Assembly: GCA_951406725.2 (NCBI GenBank)
Contig: OX597819.1
Location: 64,232,001 to 64,296,000, forward strand
DNA length: 64,000 nucleotides
Direction: 5' to 3'
Source: Octopus vulgaris
Lineage: Eukaryota
Shown here: positions 14,005 through 58,449 of the stretch, in pieces
Position numbering within the stretch: the stretch's first letter is position 1
How the letters are laid out: the number at the start of each line of letters is the position of its first letter
Notes under the pieces: model-generated
Seen by the model: only the letters and a program-made list of their open reading frames with translations
The model's database searches: none
Told to the model about the DNA's origin: nothing
Position numbers and translations under genes: made by a program

Positions 14005-14348
14005 TCACTTTTCTCGTTTACTCTCTTTTACTTGTGTCAGTAATTTGATTGTGGCCATGCTGGAGCACCGCTTTTAGTCGAGAAAATCGACCCCATGACT
14101 TATTCTTTGTAAGCCTAGTACATATGCTGTCAGTCTCTTTTGCCGAAACGCTAAGTTACGGGGACGTAAACACACAAGCAACGGTTGTCAAGCGATGTTG
14201 GGGTAGGGGACAAACACAGATACACAAACATATATACACACATACACACATATATATATATATATATACATATATACGACAGGCTTCCTTCAGTTTCCGT
14301 CTATAAATCCACTCACAAGGCTTTGGTCTGCCCGAGGCTATAGTAGAA
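14005..14348 (-). mobile_element. SINE family B, 5'-truncated
   Basis: Reverse complement of the family B body and tail. Confidence 0.8.
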
Positions 14349-23716: not shown

Positions 23717-24268
23717 GGCGCAGGAGTGGCTGTATGGTAAGTAGCTTGCTTACGAACCACATGTTCCGGGTTCCGTCCCACTGTGTGACACTTTGAGCAA
23801 GTGTCTTCTACTATAGCCTCGGGCCGACCAAAGCCTTGTGAGTGGATTTGGTAGACGGAAACTGAAAGAAGCCCATCGTATATATGTATATATATATATG
23901 TTGGCCTGCTCGCTTAGCCAGCGGGGTGGCGTCATTCGAAGGCTAAAAGAATGCGAACGCATTGTGACCAGCGATATGTAACAACATCTGATGGTCTGGT
24001 CGGTCACGTGATCACGTGAGATATATATATATATGTGTGTGTGTGTGGCGTGTTTGTTTCTGTGTATGTCTCCCCAGTATCGCCTGACAACCGACGCTGG
24101 TGTGTTTAGGTCCCTGTAACTTAGCGTTTCGGCAAAAGTAACCAATAGAGTAAGTACTTGGGTTACAAAGAAAAAGTCCTGGCGTCGATTTGCTCGACTA
24201 AAGGCGGTGCTCTAGCATGGCCGGAGTCCAATGACTGAAATAAGTAAAAGGATAAAAGAATAAAAGAG
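23717..24268 (+). mobile_element. Full-length SINE family B with an extra ~120-bp internal module
   Basis: Same head, core and tail as 34501-34996; 23900-24022 is additional sequence inside the central microsatellite. Confidence 0.85.
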
Positions 24269-27588: not shown

Positions 27589-31806
<4,218 letters not shown>

Positions 31807-34687: not shown

Positions 34688-34779
<92 letters not shown>

Positions 34780-34996
34780 TGTGTGTGTTTGCGTGTCTGT
34801 GTTTGTCCTCTAGCATTGCTTGACAACCGATGCTGGTGTGTTTATGTCTCCGTTACTTAGCGGTTCGGCAAAAGAGACCGATAGAATAAGTACTGGGCTT
34901 ACAAAAGAATAAGTCCCGGGGTCGAGTTGCTCGATTAAAGGTGGTGCTCCAGCATGGCCGCAGTCAAATGACTGAAACAAGTAAAAGAGTAAGAGT
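34501..34996 (+). mobile_element. Full-length tRNA-derived CORE-type SINE family B (octopus OR-like) with internal (TA)n
   Basis: A box gtggctgtgtggtaag, B box ggttccgggttgagtccc, CORE-like gcaccttgggcaagtgtctt, central microsatellite and A-rich tail gtaaaagagtaagag. The family name is inferred. Confidence 0.85.
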
Positions 34997-35649
34997 ATAT
35001 GATGATCGAATATTATATTGAATTAAAAGTAAGATATCAATGCACATTGGACCCCACTGCAAATAAATACGTGTTACACACAATGTGGTGCTCTGAAACG
35101 CATGATGTTATCTAAATACTTTTACACTTTTTGAACTCCCTGGTCAAAATGATTGAAACCATCAGCTGTAGTAAAGAATGAAAAAAAATTCCAGAGGAGT
35201 AGCGTTTCAGTTCAAAACACAGAGTAGCATAGAATACGCACAAAGATTTTCTCATAACGTGCTTATATCCTTGTGTCTTCAAACGTTGTACGTAATTCTA
35301 TCGGACGCAGAAATTACTTACAGAAAAGATTCAGTTAAAAATGTTACCTGATTTCGATATATTACGTCGAACACAACGAATCGAATCGTTGGGAAATTAA
35401 AAATCACTCATATAAAAGGGAAAAAGATAAACATGTGAAACTATTTTTTACCAAAGACTTGTTATATAATGCTTTATTTGTTTAGTCTCTCAAACTCCAG
35501 AGAAACTTGGATAAATACCGGCCTAATTTACCTTCTTGGTTCGAGAAGTAAACTTACAACAAATCACATCAGCAAAAACAATGGAATGGTTCACGCTCTC
35601 ACGCTACTTTCTTTTTCCGAAACACTCTTTGGCATTAAATCAATTAACA

Positions 35650-42929: not shown

Positions 42930-42980
<51 letters not shown>

Positions 42981-43026
42981 GACTATTTGTGCTGAGTGCA
43001 TATATTTATATATTTACATAAATATA

Positions 43027-43083
<57 letters not shown>

Positions 43084-43305
43084 TCAATATAGGGTGGCAA
43101 AAAATTTCGTAGAATTTTTTTGCCACCAGCGGCCTAGTGGGAAAAAATTAAATAGTCATAGACCATTTATAAGTTCAACATCACAATAAAGGAACGGCCA
43201 TAATAGGCCATTCACCCACTAGAAATAACAGCCAAATCTTCAACCGCAAAATAACATTAATTCCGCAAACCAGGAGAAAATTAAAAAAAACATTTACCCT
43301 GTAAT

Positions 43306-43408
43306 TTCTTATACGATGCACCGTTTCATCTATTGTTTAATGGTAAACTAACCTGATTAAATTAAATCAAGCCAATCTTCCATAGGCCGATAGATTCGTC
43401 AGTAAGAA
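43306..43408 (-). ncRNA. Type I hammerhead ribozyme, inverted copy
   Basis: Exact reverse complement of copies 1-3 (TCGTCAG at 43396-43402 is CTGACGA on the minus strand). Confidence 0.9.
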
Positions 43409-43843
43409 CAGCCAGATCGGAACAGATATTTTCACGAGGCACTTCCATCCCTGCCTCGGCAATATCTGACCTAAAATTTTCAAATCATCGCACTCGCGCC
43501 AAATTTATCGGCAGCAAATATAAGCCGCCGATTCCATTACGGAATTAACCAGAAAATTCATAATCTTCAACCGCAAAATAACATTAATTCCGCAAACCAG
43601 GAGAAAATTAAAAGATCATTTACCCTGTAATTTCTTATACGATGCACCGTTTCATCTACGAACTTTTTTGCCACCCTATATTGATTAATTATGAATTTTC
43701 TGGTTAATTCCGTAATGGAATCGGCGGCTTATATTTGCTGCCGATAAATTTGGCGCGAGTGCGATGATTTGAAAATTTTAGGTCAGATATTGCCGAGGCA
43801 GGGATGGAAGTGCCTCGTGAAAATATCTGTTCCGATCTGGCTG

Positions 43844-43946
43844 TTCTTACTGACGAATCTATCGGCCTATGGAAGATTGGCTTGATTTAATTTAATCAGG
43901 TTAGTTTACCATTAAACAATAGATGAAACGGTGCATCGTATAAGAA
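43844..43946 (+). ncRNA. Type I hammerhead ribozyme, copy 1
   Basis: TTCTTA(43844-49)-CTGACGA(43850-56)-ATCTAT..56 nt..ATAGAT(43919-24)-GAAA-CGGTGCATC-GTA(43938-40)-TAAGAA(43941-46). Stems I, II and III all pair and the catalytic core is intact. Predicted cleavage is after 43940. Confidence 0.9.
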
Positions 43947-44325
43947 ATTACAGGGTAAATGTTTTTTCAATTTTCTCCTGGTTTGCGGAATTAATGTTAT
44001 TTTGCGGTTGAAGCTTTGGCTGTTATTTCTAGTGGGTGAATGGCCTATTATGGCCGTTCCTTGATTGTGATGTTGAACTTATAAATGGCTATGACTATTT
44101 AATTTTTTCCCACTAGGCCGCTGGTGGCAAAAAAATTCTACGAAATTTTTTGCTACCCTATATTGATTAATTATGAATTTTCTGGTTAATTCCGTAATGG
44201 AATCGGCGGCTTATATTTGCTGCCGATAAATTTGGCGCGAGTGCGATGATTTGAAAATTTTAGGTCAGATATTGCCGAGGCAGGGATGGAAGTGCCTCGT
44301 GAAAATATCTGTTCCGATCTGGCTG

Positions 44326-44428
44326 TTCTTACTGACGAATCTATCGGCCTATGGAAGATTGGCTTGATTTAATTTAATCAGGTTAGTTTACCATTAAACA
44401 ATAGATGAAACGGTGCATCGTATAAGAA
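44326..44428 (+). ncRNA. Type I hammerhead ribozyme, copy 2
   Basis: Identical 103-nt sequence to copy 1; CTGACGA at 44332-38; predicted cleavage after 44422. Confidence 0.9.
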
Positions 44429-44808
44429 ATTACAGGGTAGATATTTTTTTAATTTTCTCCTGGTTTGCGGAATTAATGTTATTTTGCGGTTGAAGCTTTG
44501 GCTGTTATTTCTAGTGGGTCAATGGCCTATTATGGCCGTTCCTTGATTGTGATGTTGAACTTATAAATGGTCTATGACTATTTAATTTTTTCCCACTAGG
44601 CCGCTGGTGGCAAAAAAATTCTACGAAATTTTTTGCCACCCTATATTGATTAATTATGAATTTTCTGGTTAATTCCGTAATGGAATCGGCGGCTTATATT
44701 TGCTGCCGATAAATTTGGCGCGAGTGCGATGATTTGAAAATTTTAGGTCAGATATTGCCGAGGCAGGGATGGAAGTGCCTCGTGAAAATATCTGTTCCGA
44801 TCTGGCTG

Positions 44809-44911
44809 TTCTTACTGACGAATCTATCGGCCTATGGAAGATTGGCTTGATTTAATTTAATCAGGTTAGTTTACCATTAAACAATAGATGAAACGGTGCA
44901 TCGTATAAGAA
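44809..44911 (+). ncRNA. Type I hammerhead ribozyme, copy 3
   Basis: Identical 103-nt sequence; CTGACGA at 44815-21; predicted cleavage after 44905. Confidence 0.9.
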
Positions 44912-45032
44912 ATTACAGGGTAAATGTTTTTTTTTAATTTTCTCCTGGTTTGCGGAATTAATGTTATTTTGCGGTTGAAGCTTTGGCTGTTATTTCTAGT
45001 GGGTGAATGGCCTATTATGGCCGTTCCTTGAT

Positions 45033-45080
<48 letters not shown>

Positions 45081-45097
45081 TGTGTATATATATGCAC

Positions 45098-45158
<61 letters not shown>

Positions 45159-45171
45159 TGTATATATATAT

Positions 45172-45244
<73 letters not shown>

Positions 45245-47667
45245 TATGTATGTATATATAAATATATATATCATACATACGTATATATATATGTATTAGT
45301 TAAAATACATATATACGAACATATATGCATACCTACATACATAAACATCCACACGCACATATACATATGTGTATACATTCACATACAAACACACGTACGT
45401 ACTTCCATGAATATTTTACCCACAAAATACATAAAACTAAATATATTCTCTTTAAAACGAAATTGTCAGAATTTCCACCAACTTTATTTTCCTTCTAATT
45501 TGACTTGAGACATATCCCTTGACTTCATCACTCAGAAATTCGATTGACCTTCCTTCGGTTACGACCCTGCCAAGTCACCGTAGTTCATCGATGGCAGACA
45601 TGACGTCAGCACACTTGATGATAACATCGTTAGACAGAAAGAGATGAGGTGTACTCTATTATATTCTATGTGCTGTTTGCTGTAGTGACCGCTGGTAAAG
45701 TGTTTGTTGAGTGACGCTGTATTACCTTTCGTTGAATTTGTTGAGTTGCGTTGCATTGTTCTCTTTTATCGTTTTACTTTTATCTTTTACTTGCTTCAGT
45801 CAATATATTGCGCAATACTGGGACACCTCCCTTGAAAGGCTTCGTCAAAGAAATCGACCTGAGTTCTTAGTTTCAAGTCCGGCGCGTATTTTATCGGTCC
45901 GCTCCTCCGAATTAATTTACGCTTATATAAACATACCAATCTAGTTTTCCAAGTGGTGGTGCGGAAAACACGCCACTGACACAAACGCACACAATCAGGC
46001 GCATACACACACATTCATTCACACTCAGGCACATATACACAGTTGCTTATCCATTTTCCGCCTAGTAAATCTACTCACATGGTTTTAGTCAGTTCATGTC
46101 TACAGCAGTAAACATTCGTTGAATTTGCTGCGTGATGGAATGGATCCTAGAGTCGCATATATATAATATAAGCTTCTTAATCACACAGGCACACAGACGT
46201 CTGTGTGTGATATCCTCCTCTGAAGTGTTACTCTTTTGTTATGAATTTCACAGAAACATTGCTATCTTTGTCTCATGTTTTCATTTTATATTCCTTTTGT
46301 CGTGATCTGATGAGAATTATTGTGTTGCGTCAGCTGCATGTACGTTGTTGTGGTTTTCAGTTATCTTATATCACATATAAGTCAATAGCAATTACTACAA
46401 TATGATGTGCATTTTTCAGAGCGAATTTATTAAGAGATAACGTAATCTACGGGAAAATTCCAAAACTAATTCGACGACACGCTGTCATCAATATTGGCGG
46501 ACATTCATGAATATCTGAAAATACAGAGCACTTATTATTCCCGTCATTTCTTAGGGAATGATATCTTTGTGTCTCTTATAACAGAAAATATTACATTCGC
46601 TCTCTTGGTGTCGTTACAGTAGCCAAGAAACTTAACCTACACCCAAAATTGCATTTCACAGAGTGACTCCGTTGTTGTAAACTACGGCAAATTCTAACAT
46701 TTCAAAAAAGAGGCTGATGGTCTTCATTATATAATTAGCGTTTAGATTGCTCGTTTCAAATCAGCGTTCTTTATTTCCAGCATTCGTGCTTTATTGCATA
46801 AAAGTTCATAGAATTCCATTTCTTTCTATCCGTTTGCCCTCTTGTTCTTCCGTACATTCATGAATTCTACCGTTTCAGTAATTTTTGGAGCAGTTCTAGC
46901 TGCCAGTATAGTTCTTTCTTCACTCTACACATACAATTATACATTTGCATTTTCTATGAAGCCACCTCATTCCCCAGGGTTACGTTAAGTATGTAATAGA
47001 TCTATGATTGCTGACTTCATTTCTCATTTCTTTGACCTTGTGTATCAGCACTGCTCTTCATTTTGTCGTTTATATTGGTGTTACATTTTCTAGTATAAAA
47101 CGGCCGTATATAACTCTTACTATTAAACTGGACCTCGATATGATTCTATAAGTTTCACATGTTAAGCGGTATATGACATGTTTATCGTCGATTGCCGCAT
47201 TTGTAGATTGCTGAGCAAGAATTGGGGTTTGTGCATTACTGCATAGTAATATACGCTCACTGTGTCGAGTTGTTTGTGGATTACAGTTTGATGTGTATGA
47301 TGGGATGAGATTTAGTGTTGTTTATATACTTCTAGAAAGATCATGAAAATCTTTTAACGATGAGAGTCTTTGAAGGAGTGAGGTGTTCGTTCTATATAAC
47401 CGAGTTTGTAATTTATTGCTTTTATTCCTTTCAAAGTTTTCTTCATTATTGATCAGGAGGGAACATGCATACAGGTTGATGGTGCTTTGGATAGGATGTG
47501 CAATTTTGATACAGCGCTCACAAATTTCTAAGTTTAGTAAAATAAAAATGCTTTTAAACATTTTAAACTTCACCAAATTCATTTGGAAGAGAAAAATAAG
47601 AAACCAATTATACGTAGGCGGGCGCAGACTGTTTTCTATTCTCAATTACAATGACAGGAGAAGGTTT

Positions 47668-57571: not shown

Positions 57572-57605
<34 letters not shown>

Positions 57606-58024
57606 TCAGGGTGAATACTTGATAAGTGTAAGCACCTGTATATGCCAGCTAGTAGCAGAGGTGAGAGGATATATGCATCAAATGAAATAAAACAGAACAC
57701 AAAGGATGTCGCGGTACACGTGTTTCAAGCTTTATAAAACAATCTATTTTTACATCAATGTGTAATCGACATAACAGATGGTTTAAAGCTCTCTTCAGCC
57801 GCATGCAATTGCTATACCAAAGAATTACATCACATTATGAACTTATGAAAATTCCGAAAAAGTACATTTGGTATTATCTATAATGATGGGTATATTAAGT
57901 TTCACTGAGAAAGTATGTTTGTAAATCCTCATAATCAAATATTTGTGTAGGGTACCATTGGACTTCAAAATTCCGTCCATACTTTATCATCAGTCAACAT
58001 ATATAGGTGACAGAGTTGGTATCT

Positions 58025-58235
58025 CTACTTGTTTCAGTCCTTTGACTGCGGCCATGTTGAATCACTGCCCTAAAGAATTTTAATCGGAGAAATCGACCCC
58101 AAGTGTTATATTCCTTGTAAAACAAGTATTTATTCCATCTGCCTCTCCTGCTGAAGTTACAGGGACATATACGCACAGCATCGGTTGGCAAGTGACAGCG
58201 GTAGGAGGAGGGGGCAAACACAGACAGATACACAC
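58025..58235 (-). mobile_element. SINE family B, 3' half
   Basis: ctacttgtttcagtcctttgactgcggccatg..atcgaccccaag..ggggcaaacacagac. Confidence 0.7.
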
Positions 58236-58249
58236 TTAAGCATATACAA

Positions 58250-58449
<200 letters not shown>

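What the first reader, a model, noticed from the sequence alone, without database searches (positions are those of the whole stretch)
43655..45036. Tandem ~482-nt repeat in which every unit carries an intact type I hammerhead ribozyme: candidate cephalopod retrozyme / circRNA source
Seen: three identical 103-nt motifs at a 482-483 period, each with stem I UUCUUA/UAAGAA (extendable CUG/CAG across an AUUA bulge), core CUGACGA, stem II AUCUAU/AUAGAU, GAAA, stem III and a GUA cleavage triplet. The copies differ by scattered substitutions and indels elsewhere but not within the ribozyme. Established: metazoan non-LTR retrozymes are non-coding tandem monomers with one type I hammerhead each; multimeric transcripts self-cleave to monomers that circularise (described in newt/axolotl, schistosomes, cnidarians and mussels). 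Inference: this is such an element, predicted to release 482-nt (43941-44422) and 483-nt (44423-44905) monomers, longer than the ~150-400 nt usually reported. I know of no described octopus example but cannot search.
Basis: partly seen in the sequence, partly recalled or inferred. Interest (0 to 1): 0.95.

Follow-up and report, generated by a model that had tools for sequence, protein, structure and literature searches.

The report
Hammerhead-ribozyme tandem repeat (retrozyme-like insertion)
A non-coding 482-base repeat in which every copy carries a complete self-cleaving hammerhead ribozyme motif sits inside a (TA)n microsatellite; it looks like a new example of the known "retrozyme" mobile elements, which are thought to spread through small circular RNAs.

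Summary
A 482/483-nt tandem array lies at 43655-45036, and three identical 103-nt type I hammerhead (HHR) motifs sit at the stated spacing. All core nucleotides and all three helices are present. A descriptor scan finds this motif nowhere else in 64 kb except a fourth copy, and in none of 400 shuffled windows.

- An inverted, 5'-truncated ~1.2-unit copy lies directly upstream (43076-43658) and carries the fourth full HHR on the minus strand.
- The whole 1.96-kb block is abutted on both sides by (TA)n.
- A second, unrelated HHR-like motif lies at 57710-57803(-).

Partial tandem, inverted truncated copy and (TA)n target together match the published insertion signature of Penelope-like elements. 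The unit is non-coding, 37.6% GC and strongly self-paired (circular MFE z = -5.5).

Against: Rfam's hammerhead models do not score it. Helix II carries a 56-nt extension and an A10.1-U11.1 pair. No relatives were retrievable, so there is no covariation evidence. Cleavage, circles and the cephalopod origin are untested.

Verdict: very probably a non-LTR retrozyme, a new member of a known kind. The 482-nt size is not unusual (published range 51-972 bp). Interest is moderate.

The parts
42933..43078 (.). Left (TA)n/(AT)n microsatellite directly abutting the insertion
   Evidence: TRF period 2, 70.5 copies. Junction ...ATATATAATTAATCAATATAGGGTGG read.
43076..43311 (-). Inverted copy, unit positions 1-234. 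Its sense-strand 3' end (unit T234, in AUUAU) meets the left (TA)n.
   Evidence: blastn of the unit against the window, 97.5% over 236 nt. Inverted repeat I4, 99%.
43312..43564 (-). Inverted copy, unit positions 230-482. With the previous part it forms one unit length plus 5 nt (489 nt), starting and ending in the same AUUAU.
   Evidence: blastn 100% over 253 nt. Junction read.
43306..43408 (-). Fourth complete hammerhead motif, identical to the three on the + strand. Predicted cut between 43312 and 43311.
   Evidence: Descriptor hit. Identity of all four 103-mers.
43562..43658 (-). Innermost inverted fragment (unit 462-482 + 1-76) with a 5'-truncated hammerhead. It is joined to the next inverted segment with a 153-nt skip (unit 77-229).
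   Evidence: blastn. Direct repeats D5/D6 at 326-327 nt spacing. Junction GTTGAAG|ATTATGAA.
43655..43940 (+). Forward partial unit (unit 197-482). Its 5' end lies in the loop of the unit's 35-nt palindrome and joins the inverted copy head-to-head through TCTA microhomology.
   Evidence: blastn 99.3% over 286 nt. Sequence.
43844..43946 (+). Hammerhead copy 1. Stem I 5' strand 43844-43849; core CUGACGA 43850-43856; helix II 43857-43924 (6 bp, internal loop, long imperfect hairpin); GAAA 43925-43928; helix III 43928-43939; A17 at 43940; stem I 3' strand 43941-43946. Optional outer stem UCUG 43836-43839 / CAGG 43951-43954.
43941..44422 (+). Full monomer 1 (482 nt), from predicted cut site to predicted cut site
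   Evidence: Circular fold -142.1 kcal/mol, z = -5.5.
44326..44428 (+). Hammerhead copy 2, predicted cut after 44422
44423..44905 (+). Full monomer 2 (483 nt), 98.8% identical to monomer 1
44809..44911 (+). Hammerhead copy 3, predicted cut after 44905
44906..45036 (+). Forward 3' partial unit (unit 1-129). Its 3' end meets the right (TA)n.
   Evidence: blastn 97.7% over 131 nt. Junction CCTTGATTGTG|TATATA.
45037..45296 (.). Right (TA)n microsatellite directly abutting the insertion
   Evidence: TRF period 2, 129.5 copies.

Best explanation
The block 43076-45036 is one retrotransposed insertion of a non-autonomous, non-coding 482-nt element of the animal non-LTR retrozyme kind.

**Proposed cycle.** All steps are inferred from the published retrozyme model; none was shown here.
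1. Read-through transcription of the + strand gives multimeric RNA.
2. Each unit folds a type I hammerhead and cuts after the GUA (after 43940, 44422 and 44905). Because helix III is weak and self-complementary, two neighbouring motifs probably pair through an extended helix III. [quoted passage not shown]
3. A host RtcB-type tRNA ligase closes them into stable, highly base-paired circles.
4. A reverse transcriptase/endonuclease supplied in trans by a Penelope-like element (PLE) nicks a (TA)n microsatellite and copies the circular or multimeric RNA for more than one turn.
5. Priming from both nicked strands, followed by joining of the two cDNAs at their truncated 5' ends, gives the structure seen here: 2.9 forward units plus an inverted, 5'-truncated twin, with both 3' ends facing outward into (TA)n.

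**Shown here.** The repeat, the complete HHR motif in every unit, its improbability by chance, the lack of coding capacity, the strong predicted structure, the inverted twin, and the (TA)n flanks.
For: **Motif**
- All conserved HHR positions are present in type I topology (C3-A9 as CUGACGA, G12-A14, A15.1-U16.1, H17 = A), with helices of 6, 6+ and 4 bp.
- There were 0 hits in 400 shuffled windows. Even a much looser descriptor expects only 0.011 sites per 64 kb.
- The catalytic fold costs only 2.1 kcal/mol more than the MFE (-30.9 against -33.0).
- Helix III is marginal as a hairpin (-0.2 kcal/mol) but forms a 12-bp duplex with a second copy (-17.5 kcal/mol). It is capped by the palindromic tetraloop UGCA. 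A short helix III with a palindromic loop, working as a dimer, is the described hallmark of metazoan type I HHRs (PMC4209133; PMC7229834).

**Element**
- 482/483-nt tandem units.
- Longest stop-free frame 60 aa.
- GC 37.6%.
- Circular monomer MFE -142.1 kcal/mol against -111.5 +/- 5.6 for shuffles, z = -5.5, 59% paired.
- It meets the operational definition [quoted passage not shown].

**Insertion signature**
- An inverted 5'-truncated copy sits immediately upstream of the partial tandem.
- (TA)n lies flush at both ends.
- This is the arrangement described for PLE insertions, with (TA)n as the preferred target of Naiad PLEs, which are abundant in cephalopods (PMC8557442).
- The two outward 3' ends lie at different unit positions (129 and 234), and one segment is one unit length plus 5 nt. 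Both fit a template without a fixed 3' end, meaning a circle or a multimer.

**Variation and context**
- There were 0 changes in 1012 compared nt of the HHR-bearing half against 13 in 927 nt of the other half (p = 6.5e-5).
- A second HHR-like motif with a palindromic helix III lies elsewhere in the window. This suggests the genome hosts HHR-bearing retroelements.
Against: - Rfam 15 gives no hammerhead match, neither at gathering score over the whole window nor at E<=10 on 2.1 kb or on 136 nt.
- The G10.1-C11.1 pair, called highly conserved in canonical and PLE HHRs, is A-U here.
- Helix II is 6 bp followed by an internal loop and a 56-nt hairpin, not the canonical 4 bp plus loop. The known loop 1-loop 2 contacts therefore cannot be assumed.
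- The MFE pairs part of the core (ACGA with UCGU).
- All copies belong to one insertion and are 98-100% identical. There is no independent conservation or covariation.
- No other copy exists in the window, and none was found in any searchable collection.
- No PLE ORF was recognised in the window. The only RT is LINE-type.
- (TA)n tracts make up 4% of this window, so a flanking (TA)n is less special than it would be elsewhere.
- There are no expression data, and the organism is unknown.
Confidence: 0.75

Rival explanations
1. An ordinary minisatellite or satellite that descends from an HHR-bearing element (for example a PLE pseudo-LTR) but is no longer a working retrozyme. The hammerhead would be a relic that does not cleave usefully. 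The array would have grown and been partly inverted by DNA-level processes such as unequal exchange, replication slippage or fold-back repair.
For: - No Rfam hit.
- Non-canonical A10.1-U11.1 pair and a very long helix II.
- Only one locus is visible and no relatives were found.
- The invariant block is much larger than the HHR, so the invariance is not evidence about the ribozyme as such.
Against: - The motif is complete in all four full copies and nearly iso-energetic with the MFE.
- Copies differ by 1.2% or less, so the insertion is young.
- Flush (TA)n on both sides, a head-to-head truncated twin and different outward 3' ends look like a retrotransposition product rather than in-situ satellite growth (PMC8557442).
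Confidence: 0.15
2. Part of an autonomous Penelope-like element. The repeats would be its pseudo-LTRs, and the ORF would have been lost by deletion or mis-assembly.
For: - PLE pLTRs carry type I HHRs and occur as partial tandems with inverted truncated copies.
- Such structures are said to be prone to assembly problems.
- Retrozymes are reported to be related to pLTRs.
Against: - No ORF longer than 60 aa lies in or between the units.
- Three consecutive units follow each other with nothing in between.
- No RT or GIY-YIG domain is adjacent. The nearest RT is LINE-type and 13 kb away.
- PLE HHRs are typically minimal, with helix I of 4-5 bp, whereas this one has a 6-bp helix I and a real helix III.
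Confidence: 0.06
3. An endogenised copy of a viroid-like or deltavirus-like circular RNA replicon rather than a retrotransposon.
For: - Size, non-coding nature, strong self-pairing and a hammerhead.
Against: - A ribozyme is found in one polarity only. The complement of the forward units contains no HHR and no Rfam ribozyme on either strand.
- The insertion architecture is that of a PLE-type retroelement.
Confidence: 0.02
4. A chance hammerhead look-alike in an unrelated tandem repeat.
For: - The motif is short and the helix II span was left free up to about 110 nt in my descriptor.
- There is no independent conservation.
Against: - 0 hits in 400 shuffles at loose thresholds.
- 0.011 sites per 64 kb at very loose thresholds, and none as good, in 1500 shuffles.
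- The motif also shows features that were not in the descriptor: a palindromic loop 3, an extendable helix I with an internal loop, and a helix II hairpin with 5 G.U pairs and no A.C mismatch.
Confidence: 0.01

Closest known systems
Metazoan non-LTR retrozymes (Acropora millepora about 225-245 nt, Mytilus galloprovincialis about 350-390 nt, Ambystoma mexicanum 330/350 nt; Cervera & de la Pena 2020, PMC7229834)
   Same: - Non-coding tandem units of a few hundred bp.
- One type I hammerhead per unit.
- GC below 50%.
- No LTRs.
- Monomer predicted to be highly self-paired.
- Short helix III, as in invertebrate and Amex2-type motifs.
- The mussel motifs also lack the archetypal loop 1-loop 2 nucleotides.
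   Different: - The unit is unrelated in sequence.
- Helix II is extended by a 56-nt hairpin.
- The pair is A10.1-U11.1.
- Rfam does not detect it.
- Expression as circles is not shown here.
- The inverted twin and (TA)n target are not described for retrozymes in those papers.
Classical HHR satellites: newt satellite 2, Schistosoma Sm-alpha, Dolichopoda pDo500 (my own knowledge, plus the reference list of PMC6155905)
   Same: - Tandem genomic repeats of about 330-500 bp.
- Transcripts are processed to monomers by a type I hammerhead, which often acts as a dimer.
   Different: - Those were shown to cleave experimentally. This one is only predicted.
Minimal hammerheads in pseudo-LTRs of Penelope-like elements (Cervera & de la Pena 2014, PMC4209133)
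   Same: - Type I topology.
- Helix II longer than the canonical 4 bp.
- Palindromic 15.2-16.2 and loop 3, implying action as a dimer.
- Association with partial tandem and inverted arrangements.
   Different: - PLE min-HHRs have helix I of 4-5 bp, usually no real helix III, an unpaired nucleotide after A9, and a conserved G10.1-C11.1.
- The 482-nt-unit motif has a 6-bp helix I, a 3-4 bp helix III, no extra nucleotide and an A-U pair.
- The second motif, at 57710-57803(-), fits this class better.
Insertion architecture of Naiad and other EN+ PLEs (Craig et al. 2021, PMC8557442)
   Same: - Partial tandem.
[quoted passage not shown]
- Insertion into (TA)n, so that target-site duplications cannot be seen.
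   Different: - Naiads encode RT and GIY-YIG EN and lack canonical HHRs.
- This element has an HHR and no ORF.
- It could at most be a passenger of such machinery.
Plant LTR retrozymes (PMC4918200)
   Same: - Non-autonomous.
- HHR-processed.
- Circular RNA intermediates.
   Different: - Plant elements have type III HHRs in two LTRs, a PBS and PPT, 4-bp TSDs, and 600-1000-nt circles.
- None of that architecture is present here.

Membership tests
Hammerhead ribozyme, type I | Conserved core: C3 U4 G5 A6 N7 G8 A9, G12 A13 A14, the A15.1-U16.1 pair, and H17 (not G) before the cut | tested here: met
   CUGACGA at 43850-43856, GAAA at 43925-43928, U at 43939, A at 43940. Identical in 4 copies.
Hammerhead ribozyme, type I | Three helices around the core, with helix I open and helices II and III closed | tested here: met
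   Helix I 6 bp, helix II 6 bp plus extension, helix III 4 bp including A15.1-U16.1 and one G.U. The constrained fold is -30.9 kcal/mol against an MFE of -33.0.
Hammerhead ribozyme, type I | Score at or above the gathering threshold of an Rfam hammerhead covariance model | tested here: not met
   No hammerhead family was reported at gathering score or at E<=10 on 2.1 kb and on 136 nt. The likely cause is the 56-nt extension of helix II plus the A-U pair at 10.1-11.1.
Hammerhead ribozyme, type I | G10.1-C11.1 pair at the base of helix II (highly conserved, PMC4209133) | tested here: not met
   A at 43857 pairs with U at 43924. Variation at this position exists in active retrozyme motifs: the axolotl Amex2 motif has a U.U at the base of helix II and cleaves, mostly as a dimer.
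Hammerhead ribozyme, type I | Canonical metazoan architecture: helix I 6 bp and helix II 4 bp, with interacting loops 1 and 2 | tested here: inconclusive
   Helix I is 6 bp followed by an internal loop or AUUA bulge. Helix II is 6 bp followed by an internal loop, not a capping loop. Tertiary contacts cannot be judged from sequence alone.
Hammerhead ribozyme, type I | Short helix III capped by a small palindromic loop, allowing a dimeric active form | tested here: met
   ACGGUGCAUCGU folds as a hairpin at -0.2 kcal/mol and as a self-duplex at -17.5 kcal/mol. The loop UGCA is palindromic (criterion).
Hammerhead ribozyme, type I | Covariation in helices I-III across homologues | not testable with these tools
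   No related sequence could be retrieved. Exact-ORF look-ups were empty, protein-word searches were empty, the profile search gave only spurious hits, and the pattern scans of metagenome and viral contigs gave only chance hits in coding DNA.
Hammerhead ribozyme, type I | Site-specific Mg2+-dependent self-cleavage | not testable with these tools
   This needs an experiment.
Animal non-LTR retrozyme | Tandem repeat in which at least two consecutive units each hold a complete type I HHR (operational definition, bioRxiv 10.64898/2026.07.22.740005) | tested here: met
   Three consecutive + strand motifs at 482/483-nt spacing. Definition.
Animal non-LTR retrozyme | No protein-coding capacity | tested here: met
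   The longest stop-free frame in any of six frames is 60 aa. The longest ORFs with a start codon are 38-46 aa.
Animal non-LTR retrozyme | Unit size within the described range, and GC below 50% | tested here: met
   482/483 nt and GC 37.6%. Published ranges are 150-450 bp and 51-972 bp.
Animal non-LTR retrozyme | Monomer RNA predicted to be stable and highly self-paired | tested here: met
   Circular + strand MFE -142.1 kcal/mol, z = -5.5 against 200 dinucleotide shuffles, 59% of bases paired. The minus strand also has z = -5.2, so this is not strand-specific evidence.
Animal non-LTR retrozyme | Many dispersed genomic copies, and co-occurrence with PLEs in the genome | not testable with these tools
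   There is only this locus in the 64-kb window and the source genome is not searchable. A PLE-like minimal HHR motif at 57710-57803(-) is a hint only.
Animal non-LTR retrozyme | Expression as linear and circular RNAs of unit length | not testable with these tools
   No transcriptome is available.
PLE-type insertion (architecture only) | Partial tandem, plus an inverted 5'-truncated copy adjacent at the 5' end | tested here: met
   Forward array 43655-45036 and inverted copy 43076-43658, joined head-to-head. Criterion.
PLE-type insertion (architecture only) | Insertion into a microsatellite ((TA)n for Naiads) | tested here: met
   (TA)n is flush at both ends. Caveat: the window has 66 perfect (TA)>=8 tracts, 4% of its bases.
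Penelope-like element (autonomous) | ORF with PLE reverse transcriptase and GIY-YIG endonuclease | tested here: not met
   There is no ORF in the block. The only RT ORF in the window (27955-30276, minus strand) matches RVT_1 and zf-RVT and has LINE-like relatives.
Viroid-like / deltavirus-like RNA replicon | Self-cleaving ribozymes in both polarities | tested here: not met
   There is no HHR descriptor hit on the complement of the forward units and no ribozyme family in Rfam on either strand.

The most novel reading that the evidence does not exclude
The locus may be a fossil of one retrotransposition event in which a (TA)n-targeting Penelope-like machinery (Naiad- or Neptune-like) copied a circular retrozyme RNA by rolling-circle reverse transcription, primed from both nicked strands.

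The traces that fit this reading are:
- The two outward 3' ends lie at different unit positions (129 and 234), and neither is at the ribozyme cut site.
- Copies are longer than one unit.
- One inverted segment is exactly one unit length plus 5 nt and starts and stops in the same AUUAU.
- The two truncated 5' ends are joined head-to-head by TCTA microhomology.

If this pattern recurs at other insertions of the family, it would be insertion-site evidence for which autonomous element mobilises animal retrozymes and for a circular template. The 2020 review says no retrozyme sequence motif reveals the mobilising element.

A further possibility is that this genome carries a lineage-specific hammerhead variant, with a long helix II and no G10.1-C11.1 pair, that current covariance models miss.
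Probability: 0.3. Interest if true: 0.6.

Novelty: new member of a known kind. Interest (0 to 1): 0.38.

Why it matters
Retrozymes are a recently recognised and still poorly understood class of mobile elements that produce abundant small circular RNAs. If the window is from a cephalopod, this would add that group to the list, with a hammerhead variant that standard Rfam annotation misses. That implies current counts, such as the 235 hammerhead-1 hits in the giant squid genome, may be underestimates.

The more useful point is the insertion anatomy: a head-to-head truncated twin, more than one unit length, variable 3' ends, and a (TA)n target. This is the signature described for Penelope-like elements. 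It gives a concrete, genome-wide testable prediction about who mobilises animal retrozymes and from what template.

None of this changes the known picture. It extends it.

Tried and rejected
- **Rfam.** cmscan found no hammerhead at gathering score over the whole window or at E<=10 on 43000-45100, 43830-43965 and 57690-57820. The low-score hits (mir-297, RUF21 and others) are (TA)n artefacts.
- **Relatives by exact ORF look-up.** The 38-aa and 46-aa ORFs of the unit are not on record.
- **Relatives by protein-word search.** Two 60-aa stop-free frames of the unit gave no candidates.
- **Relatives by exhaustive phmmer.** A 45-aa frame against 1.84 billion representatives gave five weak multi-stretch hits in long proteins, which I judge spurious.
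- **Pattern scans.** ATAGATGAAAC-N9-GTATAAGAA gave 7 loci in metagenome contigs and 1 in viral contigs. All lack an upstream CUGANGA, all lie in coding-looking DNA, and none resembles the unit.
- **Organism identification.** The LINE-type RT ORF has best hits of only about 52% identity, and the few named hits are arthropod proteins. An ENA contig carrying one hit has no organism label, and the exact RT is not on record. No tRNAs were found, and Pfam gave nothing on 18 ORFs apart from the RT. Sequence strings from the unit and from a neighbouring repeat are absent from the paper library. The cephalopod origin therefore stays unverified.
- **Strand asymmetry of folding.** This was rejected as evidence because both strands have z of about -5.
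- **Invariance of the ribozyme as evidence of selection on it.** This was weakened because the invariant block is 2.5 times larger than the motif.
Full report
**1. What is there**

Tandem Repeats Finder reports one long-period array in the region: 43655-45036, period 482, 2.9 copies, 98% matches. The gap-free repeat finder puts the copies in register at 482 and 483 nt. A blastn of one unit (43941-44422) against the window shows that the repeat block is larger than the finding says.
- 43564-43312 matches unit positions 230-482 (100%) in reverse orientation.
- 43311-43076 matches unit positions 1-234 (97.5%) in reverse orientation.
- 43658-43562 matches unit 462-482 followed by 1-76, also in reverse orientation.

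The whole block is therefore 43076-45036 (1.96 kb). It consists of an inverted copy of about 1.2 units with a 153-nt skip, joined head-to-head at 43655-43658 to 2.9 forward units. No other copy, even a diverged one, exists elsewhere in the 64 kb.

The block is abutted without spacer by (TA)n on both sides: 42933-43078 and 45037-45296.

**2. The hammerhead motif**

Each forward unit contains the same 103 nt (43844-43946, 44326-44428, 44809-44911). The inverted copy holds a fourth copy at 43306-43408(-). All four are identical. Read in standard hammerhead numbering:
- Helix I is UUCUUA/UAAGAA (6 bp). It can be extended across an internal loop by UCUG/CAGG or CUG/CAG.
- The core C3-A9 is CUGACGA.
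- Helix II starts AUCUAU/AUAGAU.
- G12-A14 and A15.1 are GAAA.
- Helix III is A-U, C-G, G-C, G.U, capped by UGCA.
- U16.1 and A17 follow, with the cut after GUA.

The ends lie in helix I, so the motif is type I.

My own descriptor required helix I of at least 5 bp, CUGANGA, helix II of at least 4 bp, GAAA, helix III of at least 3 bp, and UH.
- It finds exactly these four sites in both strands of the window.
- It finds none in 400 dinucleotide-preserving shuffles.
- A much looser version expects 0.011 sites per window.
- The four sites are copies of one sequence, so this is one independent occurrence. One occurrence inside a 482-nt tandem unit is still far beyond chance.

The catalytic fold is energetically accessible: -30.9 kcal/mol against an MFE of -33.0 for a 125-nt context (MFE z = -3.4).

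Helix III alone is marginal (-0.2 kcal/mol). Its 12 nt are self-complementary and form a -17.5 kcal/mol duplex with a second copy. A short helix III with a palindromic loop, working through a dimer of neighbouring motifs, is exactly what is described for metazoan type I hammerheads (PMC4209133; PMC7229834).

**3. What does not fit the canonical motif**

- Rfam 15 reports no hammerhead. This holds at gathering score on the whole window and at E<=10 with lax filters on 2.1 kb or on 136 nt around the motif.
- Two features probably explain it. There are 68 nt between the core and GAAA, because helix II continues after an internal loop into a 14-bp hairpin (5 G.U pairs, no A.C mismatch). The 10.1-11.1 pair is A-U rather than the "highly conserved" G-C.
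- Variation at the base of helix II is tolerated in at least one active retrozyme motif (axolotl Amex2, a U.U). The mussel motifs also lack the archetypal loop-loop nucleotides.
- I therefore regard the motif as plausibly active, more so as a dimer. I put the probability that it cleaves in vitro at about 0.6-0.7, not higher.

**4. The unit as an RNA**

- It has no coding capacity. The longest stop-free frame is 60 aa, and the ORFs with start codons are 38-46 aa.
- GC is 37.6% against 33.6% for the window.
- As a circle, the + strand monomer folds to -142.1 kcal/mol against -111.5 +/- 5.6 for shuffles (z = -5.5), with 59% of bases paired. In that fold the ribozyme core is partly sequestered. 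This matches the "stable, highly self-paired" circles described for retrozymes.
- The minus strand has a similar z (-5.2). The fold statistics therefore do not by themselves identify the functional strand.

**5. Variation among copies**

Full units differ by 1.2%. All 13 variable columns lie at unit positions 18-214. Positions 230-482 and 1-17 are invariant in every copy.
- Counting compared nucleotides gives 0/1012 against 13/927, p = 6.5e-5.
- If the T-run cluster is collapsed, p = 0.0013.
- For the hammerhead alone, p = 0.048.

Copies born identical and then mutating neutrally should not show this pattern. I infer that the differences pre-date insertion, coming from a heterogeneous template population under RNA-level constraint. 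This inference rests on few events.

**6. The insertion anatomy**

Craig et al. (PMC8557442) describe Penelope-like element (PLE) insertions as follows.
- They are highly 5'-truncated.
- They are organised as partial tandems.
- They show strong insertion bias for microsatellites, (TA)n in Naiads, so that target-site duplications cannot be discerned.
- Naiads of several lineages are present in cephalopods.

The block here has all of these features. In sense orientation, both 3' ends face outward into (TA)n: the forward end at unit 129 and the inverted end at unit 234. The two truncated 5' ends meet in the middle (forward at unit 197, inverted at unit 462) through TCTA microhomology.

Neither 3' end is at the ribozyme cut site and the two differ. 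This fits a template without a fixed 3' end. The inverted segment 43564-43076 is one unit length plus 5 nt and starts and ends in the same AUUAU. This is what one turn round a circle would give, followed by a template switch to the 97-nt inner piece.

[quoted passage not shown] It also states that no sequence motif reveals which autonomous element does the copying (PMC7761336). A 2026 preprint argues for PLEs from co-occurrence and pLTR similarity but says nothing of insertion architecture.

Caveat: (TA)n is very common here, with 66 perfect tracts covering 4% of bases. One flank by chance would not be remarkable. Two flush flanks are less likely, by my rough estimate about 4e-5 if the two ends are independent.

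**7. Surroundings**

- The window is AT-rich, microsatellite-rich, and without recognisable host genes or tRNAs.
- Its one clear protein-coding relic is a LINE-type RT (27955-30276, minus strand; RVT_1 at 1.8e-32 and zf-RVT). The closest database relatives are about 52% identical, and the few named hits are arthropod proteins.
- No PLE ORF was recognised.
- The claim that this is cephalopod DNA could not be checked by any route I tried.

**8. Comparison with what is known**

The locus works like, and by every testable sequence criterion is, an animal non-LTR retrozyme (see the membership table).
- Such elements are described in cnidarians, mussels, rotifers, flatworms, annelids, crustaceans, insects, amphibians, fish and reptiles.
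- Their sequences are species-specific, so each new species gives a new family.
- The size of 482 nt is inside the published 51-972 bp range.
- In the held literature I found no description of a cephalopod retrozyme. Rfam hammerhead-1 hits in the giant squid genome are on record.

The classification is therefore a new member of a known kind, with a somewhat unusual hammerhead. The failed tests (Rfam score, G10.1-C11.1) lower confidence that the ribozyme is efficient. They do not alter the overall reading of the locus.

**9. Verdict**

The retrozyme reading is the best explanation (confidence about 0.75), but activity, circles, copy number and host are untested.
- The claims of unusual size and high novelty do not hold.
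- Interest is moderate (0.38). Its main value is the insertion anatomy, which points to (TA)n-targeting PLE machinery and a circular template and can be tested genome-wide.

Noticed in passing
window 57710-57803 (minus strand): A second hammerhead-like motif, unrelated in sequence to the 482-nt unit.
- Elements: stem I UGCGG/CCGCG, core CUGAAGA, helix II GAGCUUUA/UAAAGCUU, GAAA, helix III ACACGUGU, GUA, with the cut predicted between 57715 and 57714.
- Helix II is 8 bp with G.U at 10.1-11.1. Alternatively it is 7 bp with an unpaired G after A9, as in PLE minimal hammerheads. It carries a hairpin extension of about 49 nt.
- Helix III is a perfect 8-nt palindrome.
- A very loose descriptor expects 0.011 sites per 64 kb, and none as good appeared in 1500 shuffles.
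- It is not seen by Rfam.
- It lies 107 nt upstream of (TA)15 at 57573-57602.
- It shares two oddities with the main motif: a long helix II and no G10.1-C11.1 pair.
   Followed up: partly
window 57980-58250 (minus strand) and 34750-35030 (plus strand); short matches at 24085-24125 and 14150-14192: A dispersed repeat, about 75% identical between the two longer copies, containing ...CATGGCCGCAGTCAAA(G/T)GACTGAAACAAGT... Both copies begin right next to a (TA)n/(TG)n tract. It may be a SINE-like family that also lands in microsatellites.
   Followed up: partly
window 27955-30276 and 30330-31331 (minus strand): A 773-aa ORF with RVT_1 (E = 1.8e-32) and a weak zf-RVT match is preceded by a 333-aa ORF with no Pfam hit. 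This is a LINE-type retrotransposon. Its nearest database relatives are only about 52% identical, and the few named hits are arthropod proteins.
   Followed up: partly
whole window: The density of (TA)n is very high, with 66 perfect (TA)>=8 tracts covering 4% of bases. There are also (AC)n and (GA)n tracts, and overall GC is 33.6%. No tRNA genes and no Rfam family at gathering score were found anywhere in the window.
   Followed up: yes
window 44123-44157, 44606-44640, 43093-43127 (unit positions 183-217): A 35-nt near-perfect palindrome occurs in every unit: GGTGGCAAAAAAATTCTACGAAATTTTTTGCCACC, with a 12-13-bp stem. The 5' truncation point of the forward array (43655) lies in its loop, which might mark a reverse-transcriptase stall or switch site.
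   Followed up: partly
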